In this document: positions 4,801 through 62,290 of the stretch, in pieces
Position numbering within the stretch: position 1 is the first letter of the stretch
Layout: each line of letters opens with the position of its first letter
NCBI RefSeq assembly: GCF_964204865.1
Contig: NC_135257.1
Coordinates: forward strand, 13,206,001-13,270,000
Source: Styela clava
Lineage: Eukaryota
Direction: 5' to 3'
Length of the DNA stretch: 64,000 bases
Made by a program: the position numbers and the translations under genes
The notes under the pieces: generated by a model
What the model saw: only the letters and a program-made list of their open reading frames with translations
Database searches by the model: none
Told to the model about the DNA's origin: nothing

Positions 4801-7718
4801 TTGAGTATAACTTTCCGGTCTGAGGGAAGTTTATGAACTGTTAAAACAACATCCTTGGCTATTCCAAAATTCGATTCAGTTTTAATTTCGTGATCAAAAT
4901 ATCCCGATCCTCCAATAATCTCAATTGACGAACTGAAATTTGGTCTATTAAACATTACAATAGACTGTGGGGATAATGTTATAACATTTACTATATCTAA
5001 TGCCACAGATGCTTGAACAGATGGACTGACTTTGCAGTCATACTTGGAGCATATGTCTCTTTTTACAAAATCTTCATACCTGTCAATGTGTAATTGCAAT
5101 GCCTTTTCTCCCACATCTCTAGGCATCAACAGGCCTTGGCGTATGAAGTGCTTCGTTTGTCCATCAGAATTAGGCACAAATTGCGACTTTGTAGTACTCG
5201 CAGAAACCATTGAAAATGAAGACGATATCCAACGCTTGGATAATGAGGTAAAATTATCAAATTGATAACCAAATTTATCAAAAGCGGTCACTGTGAGATG
5301 CAAAATATCACCAGCAAGAGCAACAGAATGTTCATTTTGATTTTGAAATAACGGGCAGGATGGAGGAAGATTTTGTACAGCAAGTTTTACTGAAGCAGGA
5401 GTGGCACAAGAAAGCTTCAGTGTGATTTGAGCTTTTCTTGGAAAAGGATTTGTTCCACATGGCCTATTCTGAATATTTAAAGTTACAGTTGTTTCACCCA
5501 AAACCATGCAAGTTCCAATGAAAATGTATTCTTTGCCTGAAAGTTGTTGATGAAAGTTGAAATTTGCATTGTCTCCCCTTATAATTTTCTCGTGATTGTT
5601 CGGAAGCAATGGCCATGGGTCTGGTCCACCTTCAAAACGCATCATTTTGGAAGAAGCTAATGATACAACAGCTATCTGTGAAGGGTCTAGTATTTTAAGT
5701 GGTTCATATGCAGCAATAACTGTAGAAGATTCCAGAGTTTCCTCTAGAAGTTTATTGCGATAGGACAGTGATACAGTGGTATGTCCACTCTTCAAAGCCT
5801 TTACTTTGCGCATCAAGCATGGTGGTGTCTGTGGAACTGGATCTAAAAATTCATCTGGCACTTGCTCAGTATTCTTTGCAAATTTAAAAATGTTGGTATC
5901 ATGTATAGTCCACACAAGACTTTTCATGATAGAGCAATCAGTAAAGGCTACATATTCATTGTTAATCTTAGCATACATTGAGATATACAGATTCAACTCA
6001 TCTCCAACTTCAGCCTCAAGGTAAGATATGGCAAATTTCAGTTTTGCAGGAGGGGCTATAGTGACAGTAGCTGTACCAAAATGAAAGGAATTGCGTATAT
6101 CAGCTGCTTTTACTGCTATTTTTCTTGGATGATGCTTTTCATCAGATCCACTAGAAACACTAACTTTACCTGTGTATGAAATACTAGATGATTCAGTTTC
6201 ATTTACAGACCAGGTATAATTTCCGCTCCCACCAGATGCTTGAAATGTATATTGATACAGAAGAGGATCAGGCTGCCATGGGAAGAGTACAGCAGGAGGA
6301 GTTACAACAATTCTATCAAAAATTTCCAAATTTTGAAAAGTGGAAATCGGAGAATCAAATATCTCCATGTTCTCACTACCTTTACTAAAAATACCAGCTT
6401 GCATAATCATAGATCCAACATTGACAACACCTTTCAAAAGTGACTTTATGTCACAATTTCCTTTTGTTAGAGCTTTCACAAGAAACCAAGTTCCATTTTT
6501 TACTGTTTCAAGTACGTTGAGATATTTATTATCCAGTTCACCAACTAAACGAACATTATTAGCTGGCCATATTTCCTTATTATCTTCACTATAAATATGA
6601 ACTGTTATTTCATATATTCTACCAACTTCCAAAATCCATTTTTGATATGGCGAGATTTCAAATCTTAAATATGCAGCTTCTACAACATATATATCCGAGG
6701 TTGCCTGTTCCATAAGTGAATCGTCATAGTGTTTCAGGTGTTGGTCAACCAAATACAACTGACTGTGCCCCCCATTCAAACCCACTACAACAGAGGTCTC
6801 CTTGTTGAGGTGGATCACAGATCCAGGAGTTCCAGTGATGTCACGAACATCCAACACATATTGTGGACAAGGCATAGTAATCTGGGAAGGTATTCCTTCT
6901 CTCCATCGCTCAACTTTGTATTCCACAACAGCATGTTTTAACAAGTATATATCATGAGAAGGATTCAAAAGAACTTTATCCCTGACAATGAACCTGACAC
7001 TACACGTTGAAATCGCTTTGTGACATTCTATTGTGCTCACCAACTTAGCCACAACAACGGCTGCCCCTGTTTGAATTCCAGATATCAAAATTGTATCTGA
7101 CATTTTACCTTTAACTTCAAGCGAGTCCACATATGGATCTGCAACATATATTGTATCAAGGAATTTCTGAATGTGAAGGATACTGTGGGATGACACAGGC
7201 GGGTGATGCATTTCACCATCAGATCCTTTGTGGTATTTTTCATCTTGTGCTAGACTCCACTCAAATTCCATACCTGCTGTACTGCTAAAAGTATTTCCTT
7301 CTTGATCCAAAGCTCTAATCTTCAATTCTTCTGGTGGGTCGGCCAAATAAAGTTCACGAGTTCTGGACACAATATCTATAGTTTCGATTCTATCTACGAT
7401 AATATCACATGAAAATATAGTTCCAGTTTTTACATTGGTGGCAAGAACTAGAGTAGTCTTTCGAACTGGTTGCGTACTCATGACAATTACAATAGCAGAT
7501 GAAGAGCACATATTGACTGGATCAAAAGCACTTTCGATAGGTCTGATGGTGGCAACTTCTTGTCGCAGAGATTTCCATTGATAGCAACCATCTTCAGCAT
7601 GTATTGTATAATTGACCTGGTAATCTCCATGAAATGGAAGAAGAATTTTTGGCTCTATAGCACCTTCACAGAAATGTAATAGAAAGATGAAACATATTCG
7701 GATATATATTGGTAACAT
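1881..7718 (-). CDS. NUP210: Nuclear pore membrane glycoprotein 210 (gp210), single-exon CDS
   Basis: 1951-aa ORF with N-terminal signal peptide (MLPIYIRICFIFLLHFCEG), gp210-like N-terminus (PKILLPF...GCYQWKS...CDIIVDRI), repeated Ig-like beta-rich segments, one C-terminal TM helix (YLGLLIALLVIFITTVAIFL) and a Ser/Pro-rich tail. True ATG probably 7718, just after acceptor ttctttttcag at ~7738; the ORF-track start at 7736 is a GTG. Confidence 0.93.
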   Translation of the reverse strand: MLPIYIRICFIFLLHFCEGAIEPKILLPFHGDYQVNYTIHAEDGCYQWKSLRQEVATIRPIESAFDPVNMCSSSAIVIVMSTQPVRKTTLVLATNVKTGTIFSCDIIVDRIETIDIVSRTRELYLADPPEELKIRALDQEGNTFSSTAGMEFEWSLAQDEKYHKGSDGEMHHPPVSSHSILHIQKFLDTIYVADPYVDSLEVKGKMSDTILISGIQTGAAVVVAKLVSTIECHKAISTCSVRFIVRDKVLLNPSHDIYLLKHAVVEYKVERWREGIPSQITMPCPQYVLDVRDITGTPGSVIHLNKETSVVVGLNGGHSQLYLVDQHLKHYDDSLMEQATSDIYVVEAAYLRFEISPYQKWILEVGRIYEITVHIYSEDNKEIWPANNVRLVGELDNKYLNVLETVKNGTWFLVKALTKGNCDIKSLLKGVVNVGSMIMQAGIFSKGSENMEIFDSPISTFQNLEIFDRIVVTPPAVLFPWQPDPLLYQYTFQASGGSGNYTWSVNETESSSISYTGKVSVSSGSDEKHHPRKIAVKAADIRNSFHFGTATVTIAPPAKLKFAISYLEAEVGDELNLYISMYAKINNEYVAFTDCSIMKSLVWTIHDTNIFKFAKNTEQVPDEFLDPVPQTPPCLMRKVKALKSGHTTVSLSYRNKLLEETLESSTVIAAYEPLKILDPSQIAVVSLASSKMMRFEGGPDPWPLLPNNHEKIIRGDNANFNFHQQLSGKEYIFIGTCMVLGETTVTLNIQNRPCGTNPFPRKAQITLKLSCATPASVKLAVQNLPPSCPLFQNQNEHSVALAGDILHLTVTAFDKFGYQFDNFTSLSKRWISSSFSMVSASTTKSQFVPNSDGQTKHFIRQGLLMPRDVGEKALQLHIDRYEDFVKRDICSKYDCKVSPSVQASVALDIVNVITLSPQSIVMFNRPNFSSSIEIIGGSGYFDHEIKTESNFGIAKDVVLTVHKLPSDRKVILNPVSAGHASLEIFDLCIPKATKTEGAKSRAGIVVSDLSSLFLEVSSPLEVGTTGKATIRLDMRELSAPNELDLSINLMSEPPGIISLGEPNRHDDLIFLADLTALKVGTTTIRASTTSRDGKLISSNSVRIVVFPPLELKPSRITVIRGSEFHLYVEGGPPEDVQIHYVVEDEGIASSSHDGVLSAHQIGNTTVSVKATTKDGQVFHGKSKSFVFVVQIKGVWIDSPTFRFQTGATVPLHVYGYAGPGYDPVNLDSDAAGLVFKWKVNNHAVLDLKSAHAEAGIEIPDRLKFTVLINGIGEGQSGISVSVSATRINLGQLANAQLDAEIKVVVFNPLIISQEKLWLSQNNLLLTPETSYYLLSNRDGLVSRMNYMKLCEECNLNISGNNDDDCVTVNNELRSITTGKSPCQATIVVSAEERFGITQTLAIHVKVKLVSYIIAQVKEKFYTKNSDDHLTGFPVGSLLSLEVQQFDSNGMKFDTTVLCDKFGTNRNDLLEITPSPATNILKVKCSKTGVTIFKIWTGSEYAYSFPLNAVSTINNEGSNMLMEIGSKKCFNSAIVDEDGNPGKWEIKHNGFKVDNVSGAVMSFSRATADLKYFLDPVSTKVALSSKPFSANFDENLLPEIITNAKSKYILPIKLGDTSDICDGLEEEMNKFAQNTFVCKSFLVNTIDAVTVFKPSTLYIPEIGSYACVLDRIDLATSLEEKVSLFEDASFTITLSINSDEADRGISFQNPVNVGFLPAFKLLNSSQVVMRDEKLRLCISAIQTIRESLEINTESRNLEIHEVPDTEIHGVACYEVSYIPQQQFNQDHVLKIFSPLTHQEQLVSIAIHWLPKLPSQTTSVSSGVCVDPDSARESWLMYQYSFSYLGLLIALLVIFITTVAIFLTCGFFKWAFSPPMTTQDNSSPVMVSPQRLSTGMVPYSPSGSYLFQRSSPVQRGSPSSHSNSPSPGRTPLWSSSYRLQDASLHQR

Positions 7719-10074: not shown

Positions 10075-10613
10075 CAGCGGTTCCCATAATTTTTGTTCAT
10101 GCAACACCAAATTACCAGGAATATACTCGCGGCACTTACATGAAAAAATTGCTGCCTTTGGAAATAAGACTTTTGTGATCGTTGATGTGTACGCTTTGGG
10201 CCTAAAGAATAAACGCAAAATGTCAACTCTTCTTCCTCATGTCTGCCTGATTTTTCCTTGAAATACTAAAAAAAATCACTCATGTTCGCTAAACTCGATT
10301 CAGCAAATAAATAATCTTCAGCTCGCCAAATTGCAGCAATTAGTGTCTAGGCTACCTCTACTGTTACATAGCAATAGAGGTAGACACTACGTATCAGAAA
10401 GTGAGCGATATAGAAGGTTAAAATGAATTTATTATTCATGTACACAGCATTCAAAATAAGAAACGATAAAGCATTCATAATAAACACAATATGCAAAATG
10501 CTCAATAACATATTAGTTATTAGTAAAATGCTCAATAACATATTAGTTATGTTTAACACAATTCTTTAATTTTCGGGGCGCACTAAGCAAATCGCCTTTT
10601 TTGGGAACCACTG
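10075..10613. mobile_element. Non-autonomous hAT (Charlie-like) element upstream of the TAF2 CDS
   Basis: TIRs CAGCGGTTCCCA ... TGGGAACCACTG in TAGA-containing flanks (imperfect TSD); internal 30-bp tandem duplication at ~10495-10550. Confidence 0.65.
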
Positions 10614-10900
10614 CTAGAGAATGCACAAGGTGCAAATCATTGGGAGGTATAAATCCCATCCGAAAATGTAATCTCATCATGTTATCCACTGCAAGTACTA
10701 GAAATCCCTTAGGTCAAATCAAGGTGCGTCTGGCGGTTTCACCCAGTTATTCCAATCTGGTCCTCTTGTATTAAAATTGCACACCCCTGCACTAGAACAT
10801 AGTAATACCGTTTTAGAAACAACTGATTTGTTCTGCTAATAAAATTCTTTTAAACCTGCATATTCATATTCAGAGTTTTAGATGAGTTAACAATCAGACA

Positions 10901-13900
10901 ATGGAAAAGGCTAAATCATTAAGGCAGTCTTATCAAAGACCTTTTAAACTCAGCCATCAAGTTTTGTGTATAACATCAATCAATTTTTCAAGAAAAGCTT
11001 TAATGGGATATGTTGAACTCTTAATTCAACCAAGGAGATCAGATTTAAAAACTATCAAAGTCAACAGCAAACAATCAAGAATTTACAAAGTTAGTGTGAA
11101 TGATTATGAAGCTCCATTTCAATATCATGACCCTTCTCTAGACTTGACGCAGCGTGATCCAATAGCAAGAAACCTTGAGTTTTTAAAATCTTGCCACTGT
11201 AATGCAGTTAATGTTGTTGACCCAGATACTGGTTACCATGGAGAAGTTACTATCAAACTCCCAGCAGAAGTACAAAAACTTGTAAAAGATCAAAAAGCGT
11301 TGCGTATAAGTATGGATTTCACTTTGGAAAATCCTAATGGAGGAGTTCAGTTTGTTGTGCCGGATGTGGAAGGTACAACGAGTGAAAAAGCAATGCATTT
11401 GTTCACCTATGGTCATGAAAACTCGGCCAGGCTTTGGTTTCCTTGTGTTGACACATATTCGGAGCCTTGCACCTGGAAATTGGAATTTACTGTTGATGCC
11501 ACTATGACTGCAGTTTCTGTTGGAGAATTGGTTGAGACTGTTTTCACACCAGATATGAAGAGGAAAACATTTCATTATATCCTCACTGTTCCCACAGCTG
11601 CTCCAAACATTGGTTTAGCTGTCGGTCCATTTGAAGTTCTGGTTGACAAACACATGCACGAGGTCACACATTTTTGCCTGCCTCAACTTCTACCATTGTT
11701 GGAACATACAACTCAAGCATGCTATGAGGTTTTTGAGTTTTATGAAGAGATACTAAGTTTTCGTTTCCCGTATTCTTGCTACAAACAAGTTTTCGTTGAC
11801 GAAGCATATCGTGATATAGAATCATATGCATCATTAGGAATATTCAACACAAATTTATTGCACAGTAAAATAATTCTTGACCAAAACCCTGAAACGAGAA
11901 AGCAAATGGCAAAAATGATATCCAATCAGTTTTTTGGTTGTTTTATGGCCAGAGAATCTTGGAATGATCTCTGGTTGCCAACAGGCTTGTCTGCATATTT
12001 GCAAGGCCTATGGGTTAAAAATATATTTGGAAATAATGAATACAAGCACTTGATTGCAAGTGAAACAAAAAAGCTTTGTCATTATGAAATGAATGTTCAG
12101 CCAGTTACACTCTGTTACAATGCTTCTCATGATTCTGCGGATTCAAACACTTCTTTGAGGAATCCTCATACTATGTCACCCAAGTATTATGAAATGCTTC
12201 AATGCAAGTCACATCTCGTTATGCGAATGATTGAAAATTCTATAGGCCCACAACTCCTTTTGCAAGCATTAAACAAATTGCTATCTTTGGCAAATACATC
12301 GGCACAGCAGAAAGTTCCGAATTCGACATGGGTTGCAATGCTCCTATCAACTGAAAGCTTTCTGAAGTCAATTAACACTGTTTCAGGAAAGAAGATTGAC
12401 CATTTAATGAATCAATGGGTATATCAGAGTGGTGTCGTTTGTTTTAAAGGGAGATTTACATTTAATAGAAAGCGCAATGCTGTTGAGTTGGATGTTAAAC
12501 AACACACTGGTGGGAAAGGTATAAGAAAATATGTTGGACCTTTAACAGTTCGGATCCAAGAACTTGATGGCTCTTTTCAACACACCATTCAAGTTGAAGA
12601 AAACACTACAAAGCATGACATACAATGTCATTCAAAAAGTCGTAGGAATAAAAGAAAAAAAATACCTTTGTTGAATGGAGAAGAGGCTGATATTGATTTG
12701 AGTGCAATGGATCCAGATTCTCCTGTTTTATGGTTGCGTATTGATCCAGATTTATCAGTGATTCGAAATGTAAGCTTTGAACAACCGGATTACATGTGGC
12801 AGTATCAAGTCAGATTTGAACGTGATATTATTGGACAAGCAGAAGCTTTATCTGTTCTGTCACATTTTCCTTCTCCACCAACTCGGAAAGCTCTAACTGA
12901 CATACTGGAAAATGAAAAATATTTTTATAGGGTTCGAATGGAGGCTGCATTTTGTATGGCTAAAGTTGCTAATGCCATGATCAGTTCCTGGGCAGGACCA
13001 CCTGCGATGCTAACATTATTTACAAGATTCTTCTTCTGTGAATCCACACCTCCGATTGTTAGAATGAATAATTTCACAAATTTGCAGCAATACTTTATGC
13101 AAAAGACTCTGCCAGTTGCCATGGCCAATTTAAGAGACACTAATAATGTTTGTCCCAAAGAAGTTTTACATTTTCTAATTGATCTGATCAAATTTAATGA
13201 TAATTCTAAAAGCAAGGTTTCTGATAACTACTATCGTGCAGCATTAGTTGAATCACTTTGCCATTTAGTAACACCTACCATGTCAAATCCTGGTCAAAAA
13301 GTAACAGTTGAAAACTTACCATTAGATGTGAGAATGATTTTGGAGGAAATATCAAGATTTCTCAATTTAGAAAAATTGTTATCTTCTTATCGTTATACTG
13401 TTACAGTGTCGTGCCTAAAAGCAATACAAGCTTTACAAAGAAATGGTCACTTACCACCTGATTATGTTTTACTGAGAAGCTATGCTGCACATGGATTCTT
13501 CGTGGACATCAGAATAGCTGCAATTGAGGCTCTCGTTGACATGATTAAAGCCACAAGTGATGTTGATCAGTTTGAATGGTTGCTAGACTTGTGTGAGAAA
13601 GATCCAGTACCAGAGATCAAGTGGAGAATTCTTAAAGCATTTGTCAGTAATCCTCCATTTACAAAATCTGACAGTCAAACTTCTTCTCTTAACACAGAAC
13701 ACTTTGTGGATAAACTATGGAATTTCATCAGTAAGACAACATATTATGATTCAAGAATAAGGTGTGAAGCGATCAATTTGTACAATATTTTGTTTGGAAC
13801 ACATAGGCCGAAGTGTTTACCTCCAAAAGATAGAAGGCCGTCTACTACTATATCGACCAGTGTCGGTGATAGGGCGTCTTCAACCCAAGGACCACAAAGC

Positions 13901-53891: not shown

Positions 53892-56039
53892 CGATTGTGG
53901 CACCTGGGATGTGCAATGTGCTTAACTCGCTATAGCGAAAATGTATGTATTTCTCTGGAATATTTTTATGGTATGGCTGTATGTGACACTTTCGATTCTG
54001 TTAGCAACGGACAATGTGATAGCCGTGAAAAAAGGCCCTGAAAAACGCCTAGAAAATGAGTTTTGTAGCGCACATACAGGAACTACCTGGAAATGATTCT
54101 AAAATGTTCCTTAGAAATTTAGTAACAAATAATGCCTTGTTCCCACTTCCAAAAGTTGCAAGTTTAACGGAAAGGACGCTTTTACTACAAGAAATATGTG
54201 CTACGATCTGTCCTATATTTTCTACATTTCCGGCAATGACTTCTGCATGACGTAACAATTGAATTAAATCAGCTGTTAACGAGAGAATTTATTTTTTTTT
54301 TTTGCGTTGAGTTGGGTAGCCTTTCCATAGCTCTATTATTGTTATTAGTTAAGTTATGCTAAGACGTTGTTAAAAAGTATAAGTAAGTTGTTAAACATTT
54401 GTAGATCCTTACCACGGATATAGGTCGTGAGACGAGGGCTTAAATAACGTCCAAAAATGAGTTTTGTAGCACACATCTGGTAACTAAATGAATTCTTTAG
54501 TTTTGTATGAAAATGAACATACTGAACGCATTACAGCTTGTTCCACAATCCTGATGCGAAATTGAATATAAGGTGTTGCGTAAATTCAATAATCATAGGT
54601 TTACAGAGAGAGAGTTTATTTGTTTTGTCTACCAGACATCATATACACAACAAAAACATGAATGATAATAAGCGGAACAGTTCTCGGTATAGACTGCGGG
54701 TGATAACGATACGACCATGCGATCATCAGAGTCAGTTACCACCCAACATTAATATCAATAAACATGAATAAAAAATGCTTCAGATATGTTTTAACATATT
54801 TTAGGTGTGTCCAAAAACAACATTAAATTTCCATGGAAAGAAAGAAAAAATACTAAAATATTTTCTTATACACAATAGGCGTTTAAAGTTAAATAGAATT
54901 TCGGGGATGTTGCACACTTGATCAAGTGTGGTATTGGTCAAATTTTATATGGATATGTATTTTTGAGTATATGGATGCATGAATTGCGTGGAATTGGGTT
55001 TTTAAAGTTGAAGGATACACAATAACTTTTTGTGTAAATGGTGGAAGACTTTAGGCAGCATATATATGAAGACGTTAAACAAAATAACTACAAAGTAACA
55101 AAATAAATTTGAACAGTTTATAAGGTTCAGAGAAAAAGGAAAAAAAAAAGCAAAATCTCAAAATTGAGCTTAAGCTGGGACATGCAAAATAATACAACAA
55201 CGCAGCATAAGAACTATGTAATTCAAGAGGCCTACAGCACACTAACACAAATGTATTTCTGTAACGTCTTGCCTGACCAAAATCAGACTTCCTCAGTCAA
55301 CCATAATTTATTAGGTAAATTACGAAAAATATGCCATACATGTAACCAACAACAAAAAATACTTTAATTGTGTGACAGCAGTCTCGAGGGACCTCGAAAG
55401 ATCCTCAAGCAGCGACAACAACAACGCCGATTCAGATTAGCGAATAAATTTTATGTAATAACAACACATGAGCAGTTTACAACAAGAACAGCATAAGAAG
55501 TTTGCGTTGCATTCATTTTATAGAAGCTATCAAACGTAATCATTTTTAAGCAATGAAGTCACAAATCAACATCGTGAGCACAATAACACAAATAAATCAG
55601 TTATTTCTCACTTAGAAATTTACCGGAAAAGTAAAGAAAATTAAATGAATGTACATTATGTACATAACATAGTGAACAGAAATGTTACAATTAGTCTTTT
55701 TTTAGTTTATGTGGCTATGTATTTGAACAAAAGCAATATTATTTCTCTGGTACCAAAGTTACCCCAGCAGACATCACTCTCCTTTTTGAACGCGCCTATC
55801 ACGGTTGCAAGAACTCAGATTTCAATTGAGCGATGCGAGAGTTTACGAAAAAAGCATCGATGCAAAATCAGCTGATGCTTGATGCTTTGCCAGATTGATC
55901 ATGAAAACTGTGAATAATTGCCAAAAAAATATAGTTCTCCCCCAAATATCAGTGTCTTACACATATATCCGCTTAGTATAATAAAAATAAGTTTAAGTGC
56001 TTATAATAAGAAGTAAAAACAACGAGTTTGACAAAGATT

Positions 56040-56870
56040 GGATAGGTGGGTGATATATTTATTATCTTTAAAACCTGGCCCAGTCGTCAAATTTTAATAA
56101 AAATGGCAAAAAGACCTATTTTGCCCCCAAAAAGATGTGTCTTACAATCATGTCATCTCCATTTATAAATAAACAGCAGTAGAACATATAATAAAGTGTT
56201 TATACAACGAGTTTCAAAAACTTTGTATGGGGAGAAGATATTTTTATTATCGTTTAAAGTTTAAACATGGCACGATAGTCAACTTATTAAAAAAAATGGC
56301 AAAATGACCTATTTTAACTCAAAAATGATTGTCTTACAATTACGGGCCCCTCATTTACACGAAACAAGCAATAGTACATATAATAAAGTGTCAATACAGC
56401 GAGTTTGAAAAAGTTTGTATGGGGGGAAGATATTTTTATTATCGCTTAAACATGGCCTGCTAGTCAATTCATGATAGAAATGGCAAAGAAAAACTATTTT
56501 GTCACAAAACATAAGTGTCTTACAATTACGGCCCCCCCATTACACAAGACCAGCAGTAGTACATATAATAAAGTGTTTATACAGCGAGTTTGAAAAAGTT
56601 TTTATGGTGAGAAGATACTGTAATTATCGCTCAAACATGGCCCGCTAGTCAATTTAATATAGAAATGGCAAAAAGATCTATTTACCCCCAAAAAATGAGT
56701 GTCTTACAATTACGGGCCCCTCATTAACACAAGACCAGTGGTAGTACATCTAATAAAGTGTTAATACAGCAAGTTTGAAAAAGTTTGTATGGCGGGAAGA
56801 TATTTTTATTATCGCTTAAACATGGCCCGCTAGTCAATTTATGATAGAAATGGCAAAAAGACCTGTTTTT
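56040..56870 (+). repeat. ~185-bp tandem array (~4.5 units), left arm
   Basis: tagtcaatt...agaaatggcaaa recurs at 56461, 56646 and 56831 (185-bp period). Confidence 0.9.
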
Positions 56871-57115
56871 ATAGTCGGGAAGTAATGACTAAATTTAAAA
56901 CGTTTTATGTACCCAAAATTTGATTTAGGCAAGTTTGGTACAACAATAGGCTATGAAAAGTATAAGCATTTTACGCAAAATCATCGGTCTCTAACAAACA
57001 TAACTTAGCAAAAGATAATCAAACACAGGGGAATCAAGGAGAAAAGTCAACTGAAGCTAAAGCGTACTCGTTTCAACAACAGGTGGTTTAAACGTCTTGA
57101 TGGAATCGCTGTAGT

Positions 57116-58324
57116 CAGGGGCGGATTATGCCCCTTTGGTGCCCTAAGCACTAAAGACTTTGGTACCCCCGTATGTGTAATTCGATTATAAAAACAACAA
57201 AACCACATAAGTGTATTATCCATTAAAAATAAATCACAACCAACAGTAAATAAAACAACTTTTACGAATATTTTTAGATTTTTTAACTGGTATATACAGC
57301 GAAAACTTTTGAGAAGGTCTCGCGGGCCGCAAGTCGGAGAAAACCCAAAAGAAAATATCGCGAGTTTACTTACTTTTGATTAATAAACAACGAGAGTTTA
57401 CCGTTCTGATCAGACCAATATCATGCTGCACGGGTGGCGTGAACCTTCAGCGAGGACAAGCTTAATAGTGCCATCGTCAAATAACCACCGAGTCCGTCTA
57501 AGTTGGTATTTCGGGACCTTGCAGAAAAAAAGGGATTGCGCGGCGTTAAGTCGGCTCTGCGTTTCGTCACTACTGTCACATGGCCTACGCTTAAAAACAG
57601 AGGAGTGTTTTTACTAAAATAAAGGCACAAAGCGTTAGAAAAAAGGGGTTTGAATCTCGGGATTTCAACCCCTATTGGAATATATAAAAAAAAAAATAAA
57701 AAAGCCCTGCTATTAAATACAAATATACACTAAAATTGTTCTGTGGGCTACACGTAAGGTACCAGAATGTCAGGGTTTGGACCACCCTGGTCTACCTTAT
57801 CAAAAACTCCCGACTACGCTGATCACTAGATCGTTAAAATGCGATCGTGGAACCGCCACATAGTGCAAATAGTTCATTGGTTCAATTTTTAGAGAGAAAA
57901 AAAAGCAGCAACAAGGAGAATACTAGAAAGAAAAAACAATTTTACAAAACGACTCATAGGCCATTTCGTGTCCAATAAATAAGTTTCAGTGTTTATTTTC
58001 GATAAAGAAGATAATATATTACTTGAAGACGAAAAATAAGCGAAAATTTGGAAGTTTGAGTCGTATGGTGAATTCGTAATATTTTAAACGAGAATATCGG
58101 TCATAGACCGAGGACTTATCGATCAAAAGTTAGGGGATCCCCCAAAACAGCGCTCTTACTGTATAGTGACACCTCGTGTCCCATCACTAATTAATTAATA
58201 ACTCGCTAATTAAGCGACATAATTCGCCCAAAATAAATAGGCTTCTGGTCCGAGATATGATGAATGCACATGAAATATCTGGAGCAGATTCAATCTTGTT
58301 TTTGTGAGATACCGCGTGCATCTA

Positions 58325-58361
<37 letters not shown>

Positions 58362-58510
58362 TACCTATCAACATACTTACCGATTAAAATCGATAAGTAA
58401 TAAACACCGATAAAATATTTAAAATTCTGCTATAAAAATTTCTGTGGTGCCCCTCTTTGCTTGGTGCCCTAAGCACGTGTCTATGTTGTTTAATGGTTAA
58501 TTCGGCACTG
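57116..58510. mobile_element. hAT (Ac/Tip100-like) element nested in the foldback core
   Basis: Ends CAGGGGCGGATTA ... TAATTCGGCACTG, subterminal ggtgccctaagcac at both ends, perfect 8-bp TSD GCTGTAGT (57108-57115, 58511-58518). Confidence 0.85.
58110..58402. mobile_element. Helentron-associated (DINE/HINE-like) element with (GACA)n microsatellite
   Basis: acttatcgat near 58114, (ACAG)n at 58325-58359, terminal hairpin ACTTACCGAT-taaa-ATCGATAAGT at 58375-58398; 5' boundary uncertain. Confidence 0.6.
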
Positions 58511-58789
58511 GCTGTAGTGTATGATCAACTTCATAATTCCCTAATTAGGGAGTCTCAGGATAATTTGATTGTTCGTCTCGAAAAAAGGAAAGTTGAAAAC
58601 AGAGACCAAATTGACCAAGAAATTGAGAAATGGGGTAAAAGATGTAGAAATATGGGTAATGATAAATCGAAAGGTATATATTTATAGCCACCGTCTAGAC
58701 CTCTGAAAGCTTCTTGCCTAATGTATTGATCGATAAAGATGTATTGAAAACGGAAATGATATGTGAGGCGTCTTCTCAGTCAATGGCAT

Positions 58790-59522
58790 TTGCGATTTAG
58801 TTCATACAAAATTGATTTTCAAAACTTGGTACATATGTCCAACGTTGGCTTTGAAATATTGAGCTCCGATACTAATTTCCAAAGGAATTGGTTCACATCG
58901 GACATTATAAATACCGCATCGCTAATTTTGTCATCGCAGTACCCAAATGCTGAGGGCCTTCAAAGCACGACACTTTATACCACAATATCTGGCCCAAAGG
59001 TCCACGCTCCCTGATAATCCCTGGGTAGCTGCGACAAACATATTTTCGTTCAATCAGAATACCATTCAAATCTATGATAGTTCGTACTTGAAATACACAG
59101 AAAATGACAAATATGCTATTTCGCTTCTCATGCGGCCAACATTAGGAACAAACAAACTACAGATTGAATTTCCTCTCGTCCAGCAACAAACGTTAGATGC
59201 ATCATGCGGACCATTTGCAATAGGTTTTTGCATAGCTTTATGCAAAAGAATTAGACCAGGGATATAGTTTTTGATGAGATAAAGTTCTAAAGTTCTAAAC
59301 GATTTTCACCAAATTTCAATATCGACCGAAACCACAATAAAACTAATACGAAGTTCATGGTTATTCAGATATTTTTGTAACTGCCGACTGCCCTACATGC
59401 AAAATCAGACTATGATAGATTGCACTTCATGTTTGGAATGGTACCACCCGGAATGTTGCAATACTCCTGTGCCAACTGAGGCACTGGAAGATTGCAAAAT
59501 TGAATGAAATTGCGAGAAATGC
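58790..59522 (+). pseudogene. Decayed ULP1/C48-like cysteine protease + PHD finger gene carried in the foldback core
   Basis: Frameshifted pieces: WFTSDIINTASLILSSQYPNAEGLQST / NPWVAATN...IQIYDS...VQQQTLDASCGPFAIGFCIALC / FCNCRLPY...MIDCTSCLEWYHPECC...IE*NCEKC. Confidence 0.8.
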
Positions 59523-59809
59523 AATCGATGCTAAATTTTTCCGTTATATATTCACCATAATCCTAACTCCAATTATTTTTCAGGTCCATCAGCTTCATGG
59601 ACACACAAATGATCAGTCTAATTTACCTTTAGCAATATATGCCAAAAATAAGGGTTTTCTCTCTCGATCGTCGCCAGTTTTGAGAGATGAAAACCACCAC
59701 GGTAGTTGGCACCTTGACGTGGTATGGTGGCTTACTACTGAGACCAACTATTTACCCAATGCAGTGGGTGTGTTTTCCACCCCGAGTGTAAGTGGGGAAC
59801 CCTGATTAT

Positions 59810-60900
59810 AAAACACTTATTTTTTAGGGGCGAATTGCCATTTTTTCCCCATAAATTCACGATCGAACCATGTTTAAACGAGAATAAAAATATTTTCCCC
59901 CATACAAACTTTTCAACACTTGGTTACATTTACTACTGCTGGTCTTGTGTAAATGGGGGGGGGGGGGAAGGGGGGGATTATAAGGATATGTAAACATTTA
60001 TAATAAATAATATAGCACAAGTTATGGTGCATGGAATGGTTAATTTAATTGTAGGGCACCCTCTTTTTTGGGGCAGAATAGGTCTTTTCCCCATTTTTCT
60101 CATAATCTTTTATCGGGCAATGTTTAAACGAGAATAAAAATATCTTCCCCCCATACAAACTTTTTAAAATTCGCTGTATTACAATTTTATTACATGTACT
60201 ACTACTGGTCTTGTGTAAATGTGGGAACCGTAATTGTAAGACACTCATTTTTTGGGGCAAAAGAGGTCTTTTTGCCATTTCTATCATAAATTGACTATTG
60301 GGCCATGTTTAAGCGATAATCAAAGTACCTCCCCCCCCCCCCCATACAAACTTTTTTAAACCCGCTGTTTAAACACTTTATTATATGTTCTACTACTGGT
60401 CTTGTGTAAATTTGGGGACCTTAATTGTAAGACACTCATTTTTGGAGCAAAATAGGTCTTTTTGCCATTTCTATCATAAATTGACTAGCGGGCCATGTTT
60501 AAGCGATAACAAAAATATCTTCCCCCCATACAAACTTTTTCGAACTAGCTGTATGAGCACTTTATTATATGTACTATTGCTTGTTTTGTGTAAATGATAG
60601 GACCGTAATTGTAAGACACTCAATTTTGCGTGAAAATAGGTCATTTCGCCATTTTTTTTCATAAGTTGACTATCGTTCCATGTTTAAACGATAATAAAAA
60701 TATCTCCCCCCCCCCCCCCCCCTTACAGACTCGTTGTATAAACACTTTATTATATGTACTACTGCTGTTTTTGTATAAATAGGGAGGACCATGATTGTAA
60801 GACACATCTTTTGGGGGGCAAAATAGGTCTTTTTACCAATTTTAGTAAAAATTGACGACTGGGCCAGGTTTGAACGCTAATAAATATATCTTCCGCCCAA
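59810..60900 (-). repeat. Inverted copy of the ~185-bp tandem array (~5-6 units), right arm
   Basis: Reverse-complement units (tttgccatttctatcataaattgacta..ggccatgtttaagcgataa), with poly-C/G expansions. Confidence 0.9.
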
Positions 60901-61799
60901 CGACTAACATACCGCTTCCACCCATCCAATCTTTTTCAAACTCGTTGTGTTTACTTCTTATTATAAGCACCTATACCTATCTTTCTTAAACTAAGCGGAT
61001 ATATTTGTGAGACACTTATATTTGGGGGAGAACTATAATTATTTGGCAATTATTCACAGTTTTCATGATTAATCTGGCAACCCATGAAGCATCAGCTGAT
61101 TTTGCATCGTCTTCGTAAACTGCATGTCTTTTTCGTAAACTCTCGCATCGCTCAATTGAAATCGGAGTTCTGGCAACGGTGATCGGCGCGTTCAAAAACG
61201 AGAGAGATGCCTGCTAGGGACCGCTGTGAAGCTAGTAGCAAACGTACCGCTAGCCAAAATTATTAAATTTTGATGGCTTACGTTCGAAATGTGTGGAAAA
61301 CTTGAGTAGGCTACCGGTAACCCTTTTTTTTATTTTAGTGCAATCTCATGCCTCCTAAGTCTGTAAGTGAAGAACATGCTGCTGGACTTAACACCTTTTT
61401 GATATAACTTCTGAACTTTATGTAATTTTAATAAATATTGGCTGTCTGTTAGAATGACCTACCGGTAAATTTAGAATGCTTAGGTTCGAGTTGTGTGAAA
61501 AACTAGATCTTGATTATTTAACAATAAAAGCTCATGCCGCTTGAGCGGGAAGACATTCCACTACAGCGAAATTGCTTTTGTTGTTTTCAATTATCAAAAC
61601 TCCCACTTCGTTTTTATCGGAAAATTCAACCTATTCTATGTGTTACTGCATTAGATTCTATGTTCAAAAATGGTGTTGAAACTTTTCCTTCAATGCTGTA
61701 ATTTTCGCTGCAGCAAATTGAATAAGGCTGTTTTTATAATCGTAACTCCCACTTTGTATTTACCGGAAGATTCAATTTGTTAAGTTGACTTACAGATAT

Positions 61800-62290
61800 T
61801 AGTTTTAAATTTCAACTTATTCTGCTTCTTCCGCTTAAGGTTCAGCTTTTCAATGACTTCAATCATCTCACCTTTTGTCGGAAGTAATTTCATACACTTC
61901 TTCCTTTCAGGGTTCATCCTTATAGTTATAGTGACTTAAACCACCTTAACTTTCGCCGGAAAAATTTCATTCATTTGTTCTTTTCGGGGTTGACCCTTTT
62001 AGTGACTTCAGCCACCCCACCTTTTGTGAGAATAATTTTCCTCCACTTCTTACTTTTAGGGTTCAACATTTTAGTAACTCCAACCACCTCAACTTTTCAT
62101 TGGAAGAAATTTCATCCATTTCTTCTTTTTAATGTTCAGCTTTTTAGTGACTTCCCATCCTCCTACAAAAGAAATTTCCTTCACTTCTTCTAGTTTTCAG
62201 CATTTTAATGTTCCTCAATTTTCCATTTTTTGGGACACTGCAACTTCCATATTTAATTCACTTCATTCGTTTCTTCCTTCAGCCTTTTAG
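61800..62290. repeat. Degenerate ~72-bp minisatellite upstream of the RAB15-like gene
   Basis: (g)tgacttc-type anchor at ~61854, 61931, 62002, 62074, 62147, each followed by ccacc..actttt..aatttcat..cttctt..gggttca. Confidence 0.65.

What the first reader, a model, noticed from the sequence alone, without database searches (positions are those of the whole stretch)
55763..61219. Foldback transposon whose >1 kb inverted arms are ~185-bp satellite arrays around a SUMO-protease/PHD cargo
Seen: CCC...GGG termini, a ~300-bp unique outer inverted segment, then inverted arrays of a 185-bp unit with unequal copy number, enclosing a decayed ULP1-like protease fused to a PHD finger. No transposase is recognisable. 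Known: CMC/EnSpm and Mutator/Foldback elements can have subterminal repeats and carry ULP1 domains, and PHD fingers read histone H3 tails. Inference: this may be an uncharacterised family combining nucleosome-length repeats with a chromatin-reading deSUMOylase (a candidate anti-silencing module), and a possible route for seeding new satellite DNA.
Basis: partly seen in the sequence, partly recalled or inferred. Interest (0 to 1): 0.8.

Follow-up and report, generated by a model that had tools for sequence, protein, structure and literature searches.

The report
Decayed Rehavkus-type foldback transposon copy
This stretch is an old, broken, non-autonomous copy of a Mutator-superfamily "foldback" DNA transposon (Rehavkus type) of the sea squirt Styela clava; its protease-plus-PHD "cargo" is the tail of the element's own transposase, which is intact in other copies in the genome, so it is a new family of an already known kind.

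Summary
Window 55752-61219 is a foldback element with ~150 bp of unique outer inverted repeat, inverted arrays of a 185-bp unit (about 4.6 and 4.5 units), and a decayed C48 (ULP1-like) protease plus PHD finger.

- The genome (Styela clava) holds at least 20 paired copies of 5-15 kb.
- One 15.1-kb copy carries an uninterrupted 1,423-codon ORF: WRKY-like zinc finger, DDE core (D732, D804, CxxH, E1043), C48 protease, PHD.
- The protease-PHD is therefore the transposase C-terminus, not cargo.
- The window copy keeps only residues ~977-1423, riddled with stops and frameshifts. It is split by a nested hAT-like element (57116-58510, 8-bp TSD) and lacks its right terminus and TSD.

The 9-bp TSD, subterminal tandem repeats, PHD finger and motif order match published Rehavkus transposases. 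The best structural match is the IS256-family transposase ISCth4. Zisupton, Ginger, CACTA and P/Galileo fail their defining tests. No free-standing arrays of the unit were seen.

Verdict: new member of a known kind, of modest interest.

The parts
55743..55751 (.). Left flank TTCTCTGGT, the expected 9-bp target-site duplication; no partner on the right side
   Evidence: Position deduced from 14/16 complete copies with perfect 9-bp TSD directly outside the terminal A. No second copy with 0-1 mismatches right of 61219.
55752..55761 (+).
   Evidence: The same decamer ends both arms of all complete copies.
55762..55912 (+). Left outer, non-repetitive part of the terminal inverted repeat
   Evidence: Inverted pairs I16 and I3. 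About 90% identical to the ends of other copies.
55913..56869 (+). Left subterminal array of the 185-bp unit (one degenerate unit, then 4.6 units)
   Evidence: TRF period 185 at 56019-56869. BLAST matches to arrays of the full copy start at 55913. 5 units counted.
56867..57115 (+). Transposase remnant, residues ~977-1068 (end of the DDE core, region of E1043), with stops and a frameshift
   Evidence: BLASTN to full copy C13a 5530-5252; TBLASTN in two frames with internal stops.
57116..58510 (+). Nested non-autonomous hAT-like transposon (CAGGGG...GCACTG) with 8-bp TSD GCTGTAGT at 57108-57115 and 58511-58518; contains an (ACAG)n microsatellite at 58325-58359
   Evidence: The full copy is uninterrupted here and the two flanks overlap by 8 bp. 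Over 4,000 first-look candidates in the genome. Two other copies have 8-bp TSDs. Microsatellite.
58511..58789 (+). Transposase remnant, linker between core and protease (residues ~1065-1160), with stops
   Evidence: TBLASTN; BLASTN 87.6% to the full copy.
58790..59270 (+). Decayed C48 (ULP1-like) cysteine protease domain: catalytic His replaced (DNHW to DNPW), frameshift and several stops; Asp, Gln and Cys motifs still readable
   Evidence: Pfam PF02902, E 0.055 here and 1.3e-5 at residues 1237-1340 of the intact copy; alignment.
59379..59534 (+). PHD finger remnant, with a stop in place of Trp in KIEWHC, followed by the natural stop codon
   Evidence: Pfam PF00628, E 1.9e-5. The intact version aligns to the PHF2/PHF8 PHD fingers, E 8e-8. 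Stop shown.
59786..60899 (-). Right subterminal array of the 185-bp unit, in inverted orientation (degenerate unit 59786-59960, G-rich spacer, then 4.5 units)
   Evidence: TRF period 184 at 60061-60899; inverted pairs I1, I2, I4-I15; BLAST.
60900..61219 (-). Right outer part of the terminal inverted repeat, ending at CCCTAGCAGG (read on the minus strand); the terminal decamer and TSD are missing
   Evidence: I3 and I16; no CCAAAGTTA motif at this end.

Best explanation
Window 55752-61219 is an old, internally deleted, immobilised copy of a Styela clava family of Rehavkus-type (Mutator/MULE-superfamily, 'foldback') cut-and-paste DNA transposons.

Shown. Complete elements are 5-15 kb. [quoted passage not shown] - an N-terminal WRKY-like zinc finger;
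- an RNase-H-like DDE core (D732, D804, C850xxH853, E1043);
- a C48 cysteine protease with its His, Asp, Gln and Cys motifs;
- a C-terminal PHD finger of the PHF2/PHF8 type.

The window copy lost about 5.7 kb, including the zinc finger and both catalytic aspartates. It keeps only the decayed tail (residues ~977-1423), was hit by a hAT-like element, and lacks its right terminus and TSD.

Inferred. The transposase binds the terminal and subterminal repeats through the zinc finger. It synapses the two arms, excises the element, and reinserts it with a 9-bp staggered cut. Internal deletions arise by abortive gap repair, which would explain why every copy has different breakpoints. The PHD finger probably tethers the enzyme to H3K4-methylated chromatin. 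The protease probably removes SUMO or a ubiquitin-like modifier from a chromatin or repair factor, or from the transposase itself. This copy could at best have moved in trans and is now a fossil.
For: - Family and ends: 41 matches of the terminal 259 bp in the genome, in plus/minus pairs 5-15 kb apart. All complete copies share the terminus ACCAAAGTTACCC, and 14 of 16 have perfect 9-bp TSDs.
- Arrays: 4-39 units per arm, and one copy is pure foldback with 17+19 units.
- Full ORF: 1,423 codons with no stop in L031:4186-8454. Pfam finds C48 and PHD at its C-terminus.
- Catalytic residues: D732, D804, H853 and E1043 are invariant, and C850 nearly so, across 14 homologues from tunicates, fishes and rotifers.
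- Structure: the AF2 model of residues 520-1110 has pLDDT 89.9. The top Foldseek and VIA matches are the IS256-family transposase ISCth4 (Z 12.4, against Hermes 9.8 and P element 9.6). The N-terminal sheet matches the WRKY18 DNA-binding domain (prob 1.00, rmsd 2.9).
- Rehavkus features from the literature: 9-bp TSD, TIR 26-400 bp, PHD finger, minisatellite; foldback termini with tandem repeats.
- Motif order: the published Rehavkus DDE alignment shows the same order as this family: DATGS, YY, PV.EM.S..H, TDFS.A, LC.AH..K, SPFY, N.YY.P, PLWS, N..VE..F...K.
- Window copy mapping: 56863-57115 and 58511-59960 align to 5530-3737 of the full copy, overlapping by 8 bp (the nested element's TSD).
- Decay of the window copy: stops and frameshifts.
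- Age: window ends are ~90% identical to other ends, which are ~96% alike among themselves. Internal parts of the other copies are 94-99.9% identical to the full copy (most 97% or more), and each has different deletion breakpoints.
Against: - No computed alignment to a Rehavkus reference was possible, because Repbase is not on hand. The match is a by-eye motif comparison with a published alignment.
- Pfam's MULE model does not hit the Styela protein. It hits only 2 of 44 relatives, below threshold (E 0.0014).
- The structural lead of ISCth4 over Hermes and P is only about 2.5 Z units.
- The window copy itself has no verifiable TSD.
- The roles given to the zinc finger, protease and PHD are inferences, and none is tested.
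- Transcription is not shown. Two runs only guessed to be RNA hold short, low-depth contigs over the 3' half of the ORF.
Confidence: 0.9

Rival explanations
1. It is a Zisupton/KDZ element. That superfamily was named after its zinc finger and SUMO protease and is common in fishes, where the closest non-tunicate relatives of this protein occur.
For: Zisupton proteins carry a Ulp1-type protease and are 1,200-1,400 aa long. The best named relatives of the Styela protein are uncharacterised teleost proteins with C48 and PHD.
Against: Zisupton makes 8-bp TSDs, whereas here 14/16 copies have 9 bp. The defining Pfam domain PF18758 gives no hit even at E <= 1 on the Styela protein and none in 44 relatives. 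The motif order matches Rehavkus.
Confidence: 0.04
2. The two arms are independent insertions of a dispersed 185-bp satellite or repeat that happen to flank a decayed host ULP1-PHD gene. On this reading there is no single mobile unit.
For: The window copy lacks a TSD and its right terminus.
Against: At least 20 loci have the same paired architecture, shared termini and 9-bp TSDs. The coding remnant is colinear with the inside of full elements. All 150 listed unit matches lie within such elements.
Confidence: 0.01
3. It is a foldback element of another superfamily (P/Galileo-like, Ginger1 or CACTA/EnSpm) that independently acquired a Ulp1-PHD module.
For: Galileo has FB-like long TIRs. Ginger1 transposases carry Ulp1, once together with PHD. 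The P element transposase is a Z 9.6 structural match.
Against: There is no THAP domain, no integrase-type YPYY or GPY/F motifs, and no CACTA termini. The 9-bp TSD differs from Ginger's short TSDs and, from my own knowledge, from the 7-8 bp of P and the 2-3 bp of CACTA. The CxxH motif and the N..E..F..K motif after the second Asp are of the MULE/IS256 type. ISCth4 ranks first in both structure searches.
Confidence: 0.03

Closest known systems
Rehavkus DNA transposons (Rehavkus-1_TC, -3_TC of Tribolium; Rehavkus-1_HR of Helobdella; Repbase), treated as a branch or outgroup of the Mutator/MULE superfamily
   Same: 9-bp TSD, long TIRs (26-412 bp) followed by subterminal tandem repeats, one long ORF with a PHD finger, and element sizes of 5-18 kb. 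A 164-bp unit sits in the inverted termini of Rehavkus-1_TC. The conserved DDE-core motifs occur in the same order.
   Different: The host is a tunicate, whereas the published range is Arthropoda and Annelida. A C48 protease between core and PHD is not listed among Rehavkus features in that paper. The unit is 185 bp, with up to 39 copies per arm. The DNA sequence is unrelated.
Mutator transposases with Ulp1 (and PHD) tails: hydra and lancelet MuDR entries, and plant elements of Arabidopsis, melon and rice (PMC2836005 and references therein)
   Same: A C48/Ulp1 domain, sometimes with a PHD finger, is fused to or carried with a Mutator-superfamily transposase.
   Different: In plants, from my own knowledge and not checked here, the ULP domain is usually a captured or separate gene. 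Here it is in frame with the transposase, and that arrangement is conserved from tunicates to teleosts.
Foldback elements that feed satellites: Drosophila FB, Tetris of D. virilis, Tm1 of Meloidogyne
   Same: The TIRs are built of tandem repeats of variable number. Tm1 has 9-bp TSDs, an explicit Mutator/Foldback link, and many non-autonomous and pure-foldback derivatives.
   Different: Tm1 repeats are ~14 bp and its transposase is 496 aa, without protease or PHD. Tetris and the Tribolium Rehavkus families have spawned long satellite arrays, and none was seen here.
Zisupton (KDZ superfamily)
   Same: A large transposase with a zinc finger and a SUMO-protease domain, and abundant relatives in fishes.
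   Different: 8-bp TSD and the PF18758 core, neither of which is found here.
ISCth4 / IS256-family bacterial transposases
   Same: Best structural match of the DDE core: Z 12.4, 242 residues aligned, rmsd 5.6.
   Different: 9% sequence identity. It is prokaryotic, uses copy-out/paste-in transposition, and has no WRKY, protease or PHD modules.

Membership tests
Rehavkus (Mutator/MULE superfamily) | 9-bp target-site duplication | tested here: met
   14 of 16 complete genomic copies have perfect 9-bp TSDs, and 2 have imperfect ones. The window copy itself has no right-hand TSD.
Rehavkus (Mutator/MULE superfamily) | Long terminal inverted repeats with subterminal tandem (minisatellite) repeats | tested here: met
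   About 150 bp of unique TIR plus 4-39 units of 185 bp per arm.
Rehavkus (Mutator/MULE superfamily) | PHD finger in the transposase | tested here: met
   PF00628 at residues 1374-1420 of the 1,423-aa ORF, and PHF2/PHF8-like, E 8e-8.
Rehavkus (Mutator/MULE superfamily) | DDE core homologous to reference Rehavkus transposases | tested here: met
   A motif-by-motif comparison by eye with the published alignment of six Rehavkus cores finds the same nine motifs in the same order as in alignments A1 and A3. No computed score: the reference sequences could not be passed to the tools.
Mutator/MULE superfamily in the strict sense | Match to the MULE transposase domain (PF10551), IS256-like fold | tested here: inconclusive
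   No PF10551 hit on the Styela protein. Sub-threshold hits in 2 of 44 relatives, E 0.0014. The fold search ranks IS256-family ISCth4 first, Z 12.4.
Zisupton / KDZ | 8-bp TSD and the KDZ transposase domain PF18758 | tested here: not met
   The TSD is 9 bp. No PF18758 hit at E <= 1, and none in 44 relatives.
Ginger1 | Gypsy-integrase-like core (YPYY, H2C2, GPY/F) with a Ulp1 or OTU tail | tested here: not met
   No integrase domain in Pfam. The core is of the IS256/MULE type with a CxxH motif. Only the Ulp1/PHD tail is shared.
P superfamily (Galileo-type foldback) | THAP DNA-binding domain and a P-type core with a GTP-binding insertion | tested here: not met
   No THAP hit. The N-terminal domain is WRKY-like. 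The P element transposase ranks below ISCth4.
CMC / EnSpm (CACTA) | CACTA-type termini and a 2-3 bp TSD | tested here: not met
   The termini are ACCAAAGTTACCC and the TSD is 9 bp. The defining values are from my own knowledge.
hAT (for the nested element 57116-58510 only) | 8-bp TSD, short TIRs beginning CAG; hAT transposase in autonomous members | tested here: inconclusive
   8-bp TSDs in 3 of 3 copies examined and CAGGGG...CACTG/CGCTG ends. No autonomous partner or transposase was sought.

The most novel reading that the evidence does not exclude
The Styela family may be a currently active chordate Rehavkus element. It would belong to a very large, unnamed metazoan clade of MULE-related transposases (7,221 cluster representatives and no Pfam model of the core). 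In that clade the enzyme is regularly fused at its C-terminus to a ubiquitin-like-modifier protease (C48, UCH or C98), often with an H3K4me3-type PHD finger. That would point to a conserved, chromatin-guided or SUMO/ubiquitin-dependent step of transposition that nobody has tested.
Probability: 0.3. Interest if true: 0.55.

Novelty: new member of a known kind. Interest (0 to 1): 0.3.

Why it matters
For genome annotation, the finding removes a false lead. The 'ULP1-PHD cargo' is a transposase tail, and the locus is a dead transposon copy, not a gene or a new kind of element.

Beyond that:
- It extends Rehavkus-type foldback transposons from arthropods and annelids to a chordate.
- It supplies an apparently intact 1,423-codon transposase gene, with copies up to 99.9% identical. 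That makes the family a candidate for recent or ongoing activity in an invasive ascidian.
- It shows that the transposase-protease-PHD fusion is conserved between tunicates and teleosts and is widespread in animals.

The last point makes an old question directly testable with a natural, intact element: why do so many DNA transposases carry SUMO or ubiquitin proteases?

Tried and rejected
- Zisupton was considered because of the SUMO protease and the fish relatives. It was rejected on TSD length and the absence of PF18758.
- Ginger1, P/Galileo and CACTA were rejected on core type, DNA-binding domain and TSD.
- 'Two independent insertions' was rejected because of the paired copies with TSDs.
- The partner of the left 9-bp flank was searched for to the right of the element and not found, so this copy's TSD cannot be verified.
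- The ESM Atlas look-ups failed twice because the sequence is not held.
- The second word-based protein search, using the alignment, returned only 10 proteins and added little.
- The RNA question stays open. No listed run is on record as RNA, and two runs guessed to be RNA hold only 179-364-nt contigs at depth 2-4.5 over the 3' half of the ORF.
- Free-standing arrays of the unit were not seen among the 150 listed matches. Another 174 matches were not listed, so absence is not proven.
- There is no element-specific homogenisation of units: 90.8% identity within an arm against 89.5% between elements.
- The Rehavkus reference sequences printed in a paper's supplement were compared by eye only.
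- The script printed a majority-rule sequence of the 185-bp unit. It is not reproduced here and was not used further.


Full report
WHAT IS IN THE WINDOW

The outer segments 55762-55857 and 61124-61219 (96 nt, 90% complementary) and 55858-56049 and 60918-61109 (192 nt, 91%) are inverted repeats. Dozens of further inverted matches of 100-234 nt link two tandem arrays. Tandem Repeats Finder gives a 185-bp period at 56019-56869 (4.6 copies) and a 184-bp period at 60061-60899 (4.5 copies). Between the arms, Pfam recognises a PHD finger (E 1.9e-5) and, weakly, a C48/Ulp1 protease (E 0.055) in short open pieces on the plus strand. The window has 29-39% G+C and no long ORFs, as expected for eukaryotic DNA.

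THE FAMILY IN THE GENOME

The terminal 259 bp find 41 places in the window's own assembly (377 Mb, 380 contigs). Nearly all are plus/minus pairs 5 to 15 kb apart on the same contig. I fetched 18 such loci.

Most young copies also have a 14-nt tandem duplication just inside the end. Directly outside the terminal A, 14 of 16 complete copies have a perfect 9-bp direct repeat, and the other two have an imperfect one. The 9-mers share no consensus.

The number of 185-bp units per arm ranges from 4 to 39 and is often very unequal, for example 39 vs 9, 9 vs 35 and 25 vs 11. One copy is a pure foldback of 17+19 units with about 40 bp between them. This is a mobile family with a Foldback architecture, not a chance pair of repeats.

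THE TRANSPOSASE

The longest copy (C13:1014458-1029575, 15.1 kb) contains one uninterrupted reading frame of 1,423 codons (L031:4186-8454, minus strand). The first ~400 residues are low-complexity peptide repeats. NCBI's gene model for the sister copy starts at an internal Met and is called 'uncharacterized protein LOC144431350 [Styela clava]' (99% identity), which identifies the organism.

Pfam sees only the C48 protease (residues 1237-1340, 25.6 bits, above the 20.7-bit cut-off) and the PHD finger (1374-1420).

The central 600 residues have no Pfam family but are clearly a DDE transposase:
- An alignment with 13 relatives from tunicates, teleosts, rotifers and metagenomes has D732 (in IYIDATGG), D804 (FICDGS), H853 (with C850, a CxxH motif), E1043 and K1050 invariant.
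- A profile of the core finds 7,221 cluster representatives at E <= 1e-3, and 1,287 at E <= 1e-30, among 1.84 billion proteins.
- Named members come from medaka, cichlids, Betta, sea cucumber, mussel, clam, rotifers and the ascidian Phallusia. All are 'uncharacterized'.
- Of 44 relatives scanned against Pfam, 9 carry PHD, 8 carry C48, 8 carry a UCH deubiquitinase at the same C-terminal position, and 2 give a sub-threshold MULE hit.

An AlphaFold model of residues 520-1110 is confident (mean pLDDT 89.9, pTM 0.84).
- Foldseek's four best PDB matches are all chains of ISCth4, an IS256-family transposase.
- Foldseek's local match of the N-terminal four-stranded sheet is the WRKY18 DNA-binding domain (probability 1.00, rmsd 2.9 A over 60 columns).
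- Re-alignment gives ISCth4 Z 12.4 (242 residues), ahead of Hermes (9.8), the P element transposase (9.6) and retroviral integrases (about 8).

IS256 is the bacterial relative of eukaryotic Mutator elements. A WRKY/GCM1-type zinc finger is a known DNA-binding domain of MULE transposases (title and abstract of PMC1702500, listed).

WHICH KNOWN FAMILY

Rehavkus is the best fit.
- Dupeyron et al. (PMC6446971) describe Rehavkus as the sister or outgroup of MULEs, with a 9-bp TSD, TIRs of 26-400 bp, one ORF, a PHD finger and a minisatellite. They know it from arthropods and annelids, with element lengths of 4.9-18.5 kb.
[quoted passage not shown] Rehavkus-1_TC has a 164-bp unit, and one unit has expanded into an 80-kb satellite.
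- The alignment file of Dupeyron et al. prints six Rehavkus DDE cores. Read beside alignments A1 and A3, they show the same motifs in the same order. These are (L/I)xxDATGS; YY(Y); PVxEMxSxxH; (V)TDFSxA; LxLCxAHxxK (the CxxH motif); SPFY; NxYYxP; PLW(S/T); and (S/T)NxxVExxFxxxK carrying the catalytic Glu.
- I could not pass those reference sequences to a tool, so this is a motif-level comparison and not a score.

Zisupton was the obvious rival because of its SUMO protease and fish hosts. It makes 8-bp TSDs and is defined by PF18758. Neither feature is found here. Ginger1, which can also carry Ulp1 and once PHD, has an integrase-type core. Galileo has FB-like TIRs but belongs to the P superfamily with a THAP domain. 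Ulp1 with PHD at the end of Mutator transposases of hydra and lancelet was already noted in 2010. The domain combination is therefore not new either.

WHAT HAPPENED TO THE WINDOW COPY

BLAST against the full copy shows that window 56863-57115 and 58511-59960 correspond to positions 5530-5252 and 5259-3737 of the full element. That is the last 447 codons plus the 3' flank. About 5.7 kb are missing, including the peptide repeats, the zinc finger and both catalytic aspartates.

The two aligned blocks overlap by 8 bp in the full copy. The 1,395 bp between them (57116-58510) are therefore an insertion with the TSD GCTGTAGT. That insert is a separate, very abundant repeat (4,184 first-look candidates). 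Two other copies end in CAGGGG...CGCTG and have their own 8-bp TSDs. It is therefore a hAT-like non-autonomous element.

What remains of the ORF has two frameshifts and about ten stops. The protease His is lost (DNHW to DNPW), 16 residues after the protease are deleted, and a stop replaces the Trp of KIEWHC in the PHD finger.

The copy is older than its relatives:
- Its ends are ~90% identical to the other copies' ends, which are ~96% alike among themselves. Its own two arms are 90.2% identical.
- Its units are ~80% identical to each other, against ~90% elsewhere.
- Its internal DNA is 85-90% identical to the full copy, against 94-99.9% for the others (most 97% or more).

The right end lacks the terminal decamer. 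The left 9-bp flank TTCTCTGGT has no partner to the right of the element. The copy could not be cut by a transposase now.

HOW THE FAMILY LIKELY WORKS

Shown: the termini, the 9-bp TSDs, the variable arrays, an intact ORF with a complete DDE triad, a C48 domain with its His, Asp, Gln and Cys motifs, and a PHD finger. Each copy has its own internal deletion.

Inferred from what is known of MULE, hAT and IS256 enzymes: cut-and-paste transposition with a 9-bp staggered target cut. The WRKY-like finger would recognise the terminal and subterminal repeats. The many units would act as multiple binding sites that favour synapsis; the Tribolium authors cite an increase of excision with repeat number in foldback termini. 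Deletion derivatives would arise by interrupted gap repair.

The PHD finger aligns with the H3K4me3-binding fingers of PHF2 and PHF8. It keeps the positions F/Y-C-x-C, P-Y, M-I-x-C and W-(Y/F)-H. That these positions form the methyl-lysine cage is my recollection of the PHF8/PHF2 structures, not a test. Tethering to active chromatin is the most likely role of the PHD finger. Removal of SUMO or a related modifier from a chromatin or repair factor, or from the transposase, is the most likely role of the protease. Nothing here tests it.

OTHER CHECKS

Expression is undecided. Two runs guessed to be RNA hold a few 179-364-nt contigs at depth 2-4.5 over the 3' half of the ORF. A DNA run covers the whole stretch, at depth 150-370 over the 3' part and 35-55 over the 5' part. 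That gradient fits the excess of deletion derivatives that keep the protease-PHD end.

All 150 listed genomic matches of a unit dimer lie inside element copies. Another 174 matches were not listed, so free-standing arrays are not seen but are not excluded.

The Styela clava genome paper does not mention the family. It agrees with, and is explained by, the present reading.

VERDICT

The element is a dead, nested-into, deletion derivative of a Rehavkus-type transposon. Its 'cargo' is the transposase tail, and the kind of element, its satellite-like arms and its protease-PHD fusion are all described in the literature.

What is new is the host lineage (a chordate), an apparently intact and young autonomous copy, and the size of the unnamed protein clade. 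The finding is a new member of a known kind, with interest 0.3.

Noticed in passing
window 57116-58510 (TSD 57108-57115 and 58511-58518): A nested non-autonomous transposon with CAGGGG...GCACTG ends and an 8-bp TSD (GCTGTAGT). It belongs to a very abundant Styela family (over 4,000 first-look candidates) and is probably hAT-type. It carries an (ACAG)8.8 microsatellite at 58325-58359. The 5' internal region of the full foldback element (C13a 10583-11263) is 76% similar to part of this repeat.
   Followed up: partly
window 61825-62154: A tandem array of a 72-77-bp unit (4.5 copies, 70% matches) just right of the element, and a pair of ~45-nt direct repeats at 61585-61775. Their nature was not examined.
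   Followed up: no
L031:188-215 and the ends of most young copies: A 14-nt tandem duplication (AGCAGACATCTCTC x2) lies immediately inside the terminal decamer in most ends. It is absent from the window copy and from a few other ends, so the family has two terminal variants.
   Followed up: partly
relatives of the transposase (P0064, P0071, P0090, P0100, P0111, P0150, P0066): Across this metazoan transposase clade the C-terminal module is interchangeable. It is a UCH/USP deubiquitinase, a C48 Ulp1-like protease or a C98 SUMO isopeptidase, often followed by PHD. Two cichlid relatives (P0004, P0005) carry a Macro domain as well, by the precomputed Pfam list.
   Followed up: partly
P0019: A 1,067-aa member of this animal transposase family is deposited as a protein of a bacterial MAG (Sedimenticola sp., 7.6-kb contig). 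It is probably a mis-binned eukaryotic contig.
   Followed up: no
L031:7250-8454 (minus strand), residues 1-400 of the ORF: The N-terminal ~400 codons of the open frame are tandem peptide repeats (SPSYADVLLRGLKGRATDTIARSLS-like). NCBI's gene model starts only after them. It is unknown whether they are translated.
   Followed up: no
G000:C1:15640389-15653639 (L039+L040): One locus has the arm order + - + -, that is, two elements nested or adjacent, and its left terminal decamer is mutated. A subgroup of short copies (this locus, C3:13512047-13517458 and C18:16812042-16818912) shares breakpoints near 5513/10583 of the full copy. That suggests an amplified non-autonomous derivative.
   Followed up: partly
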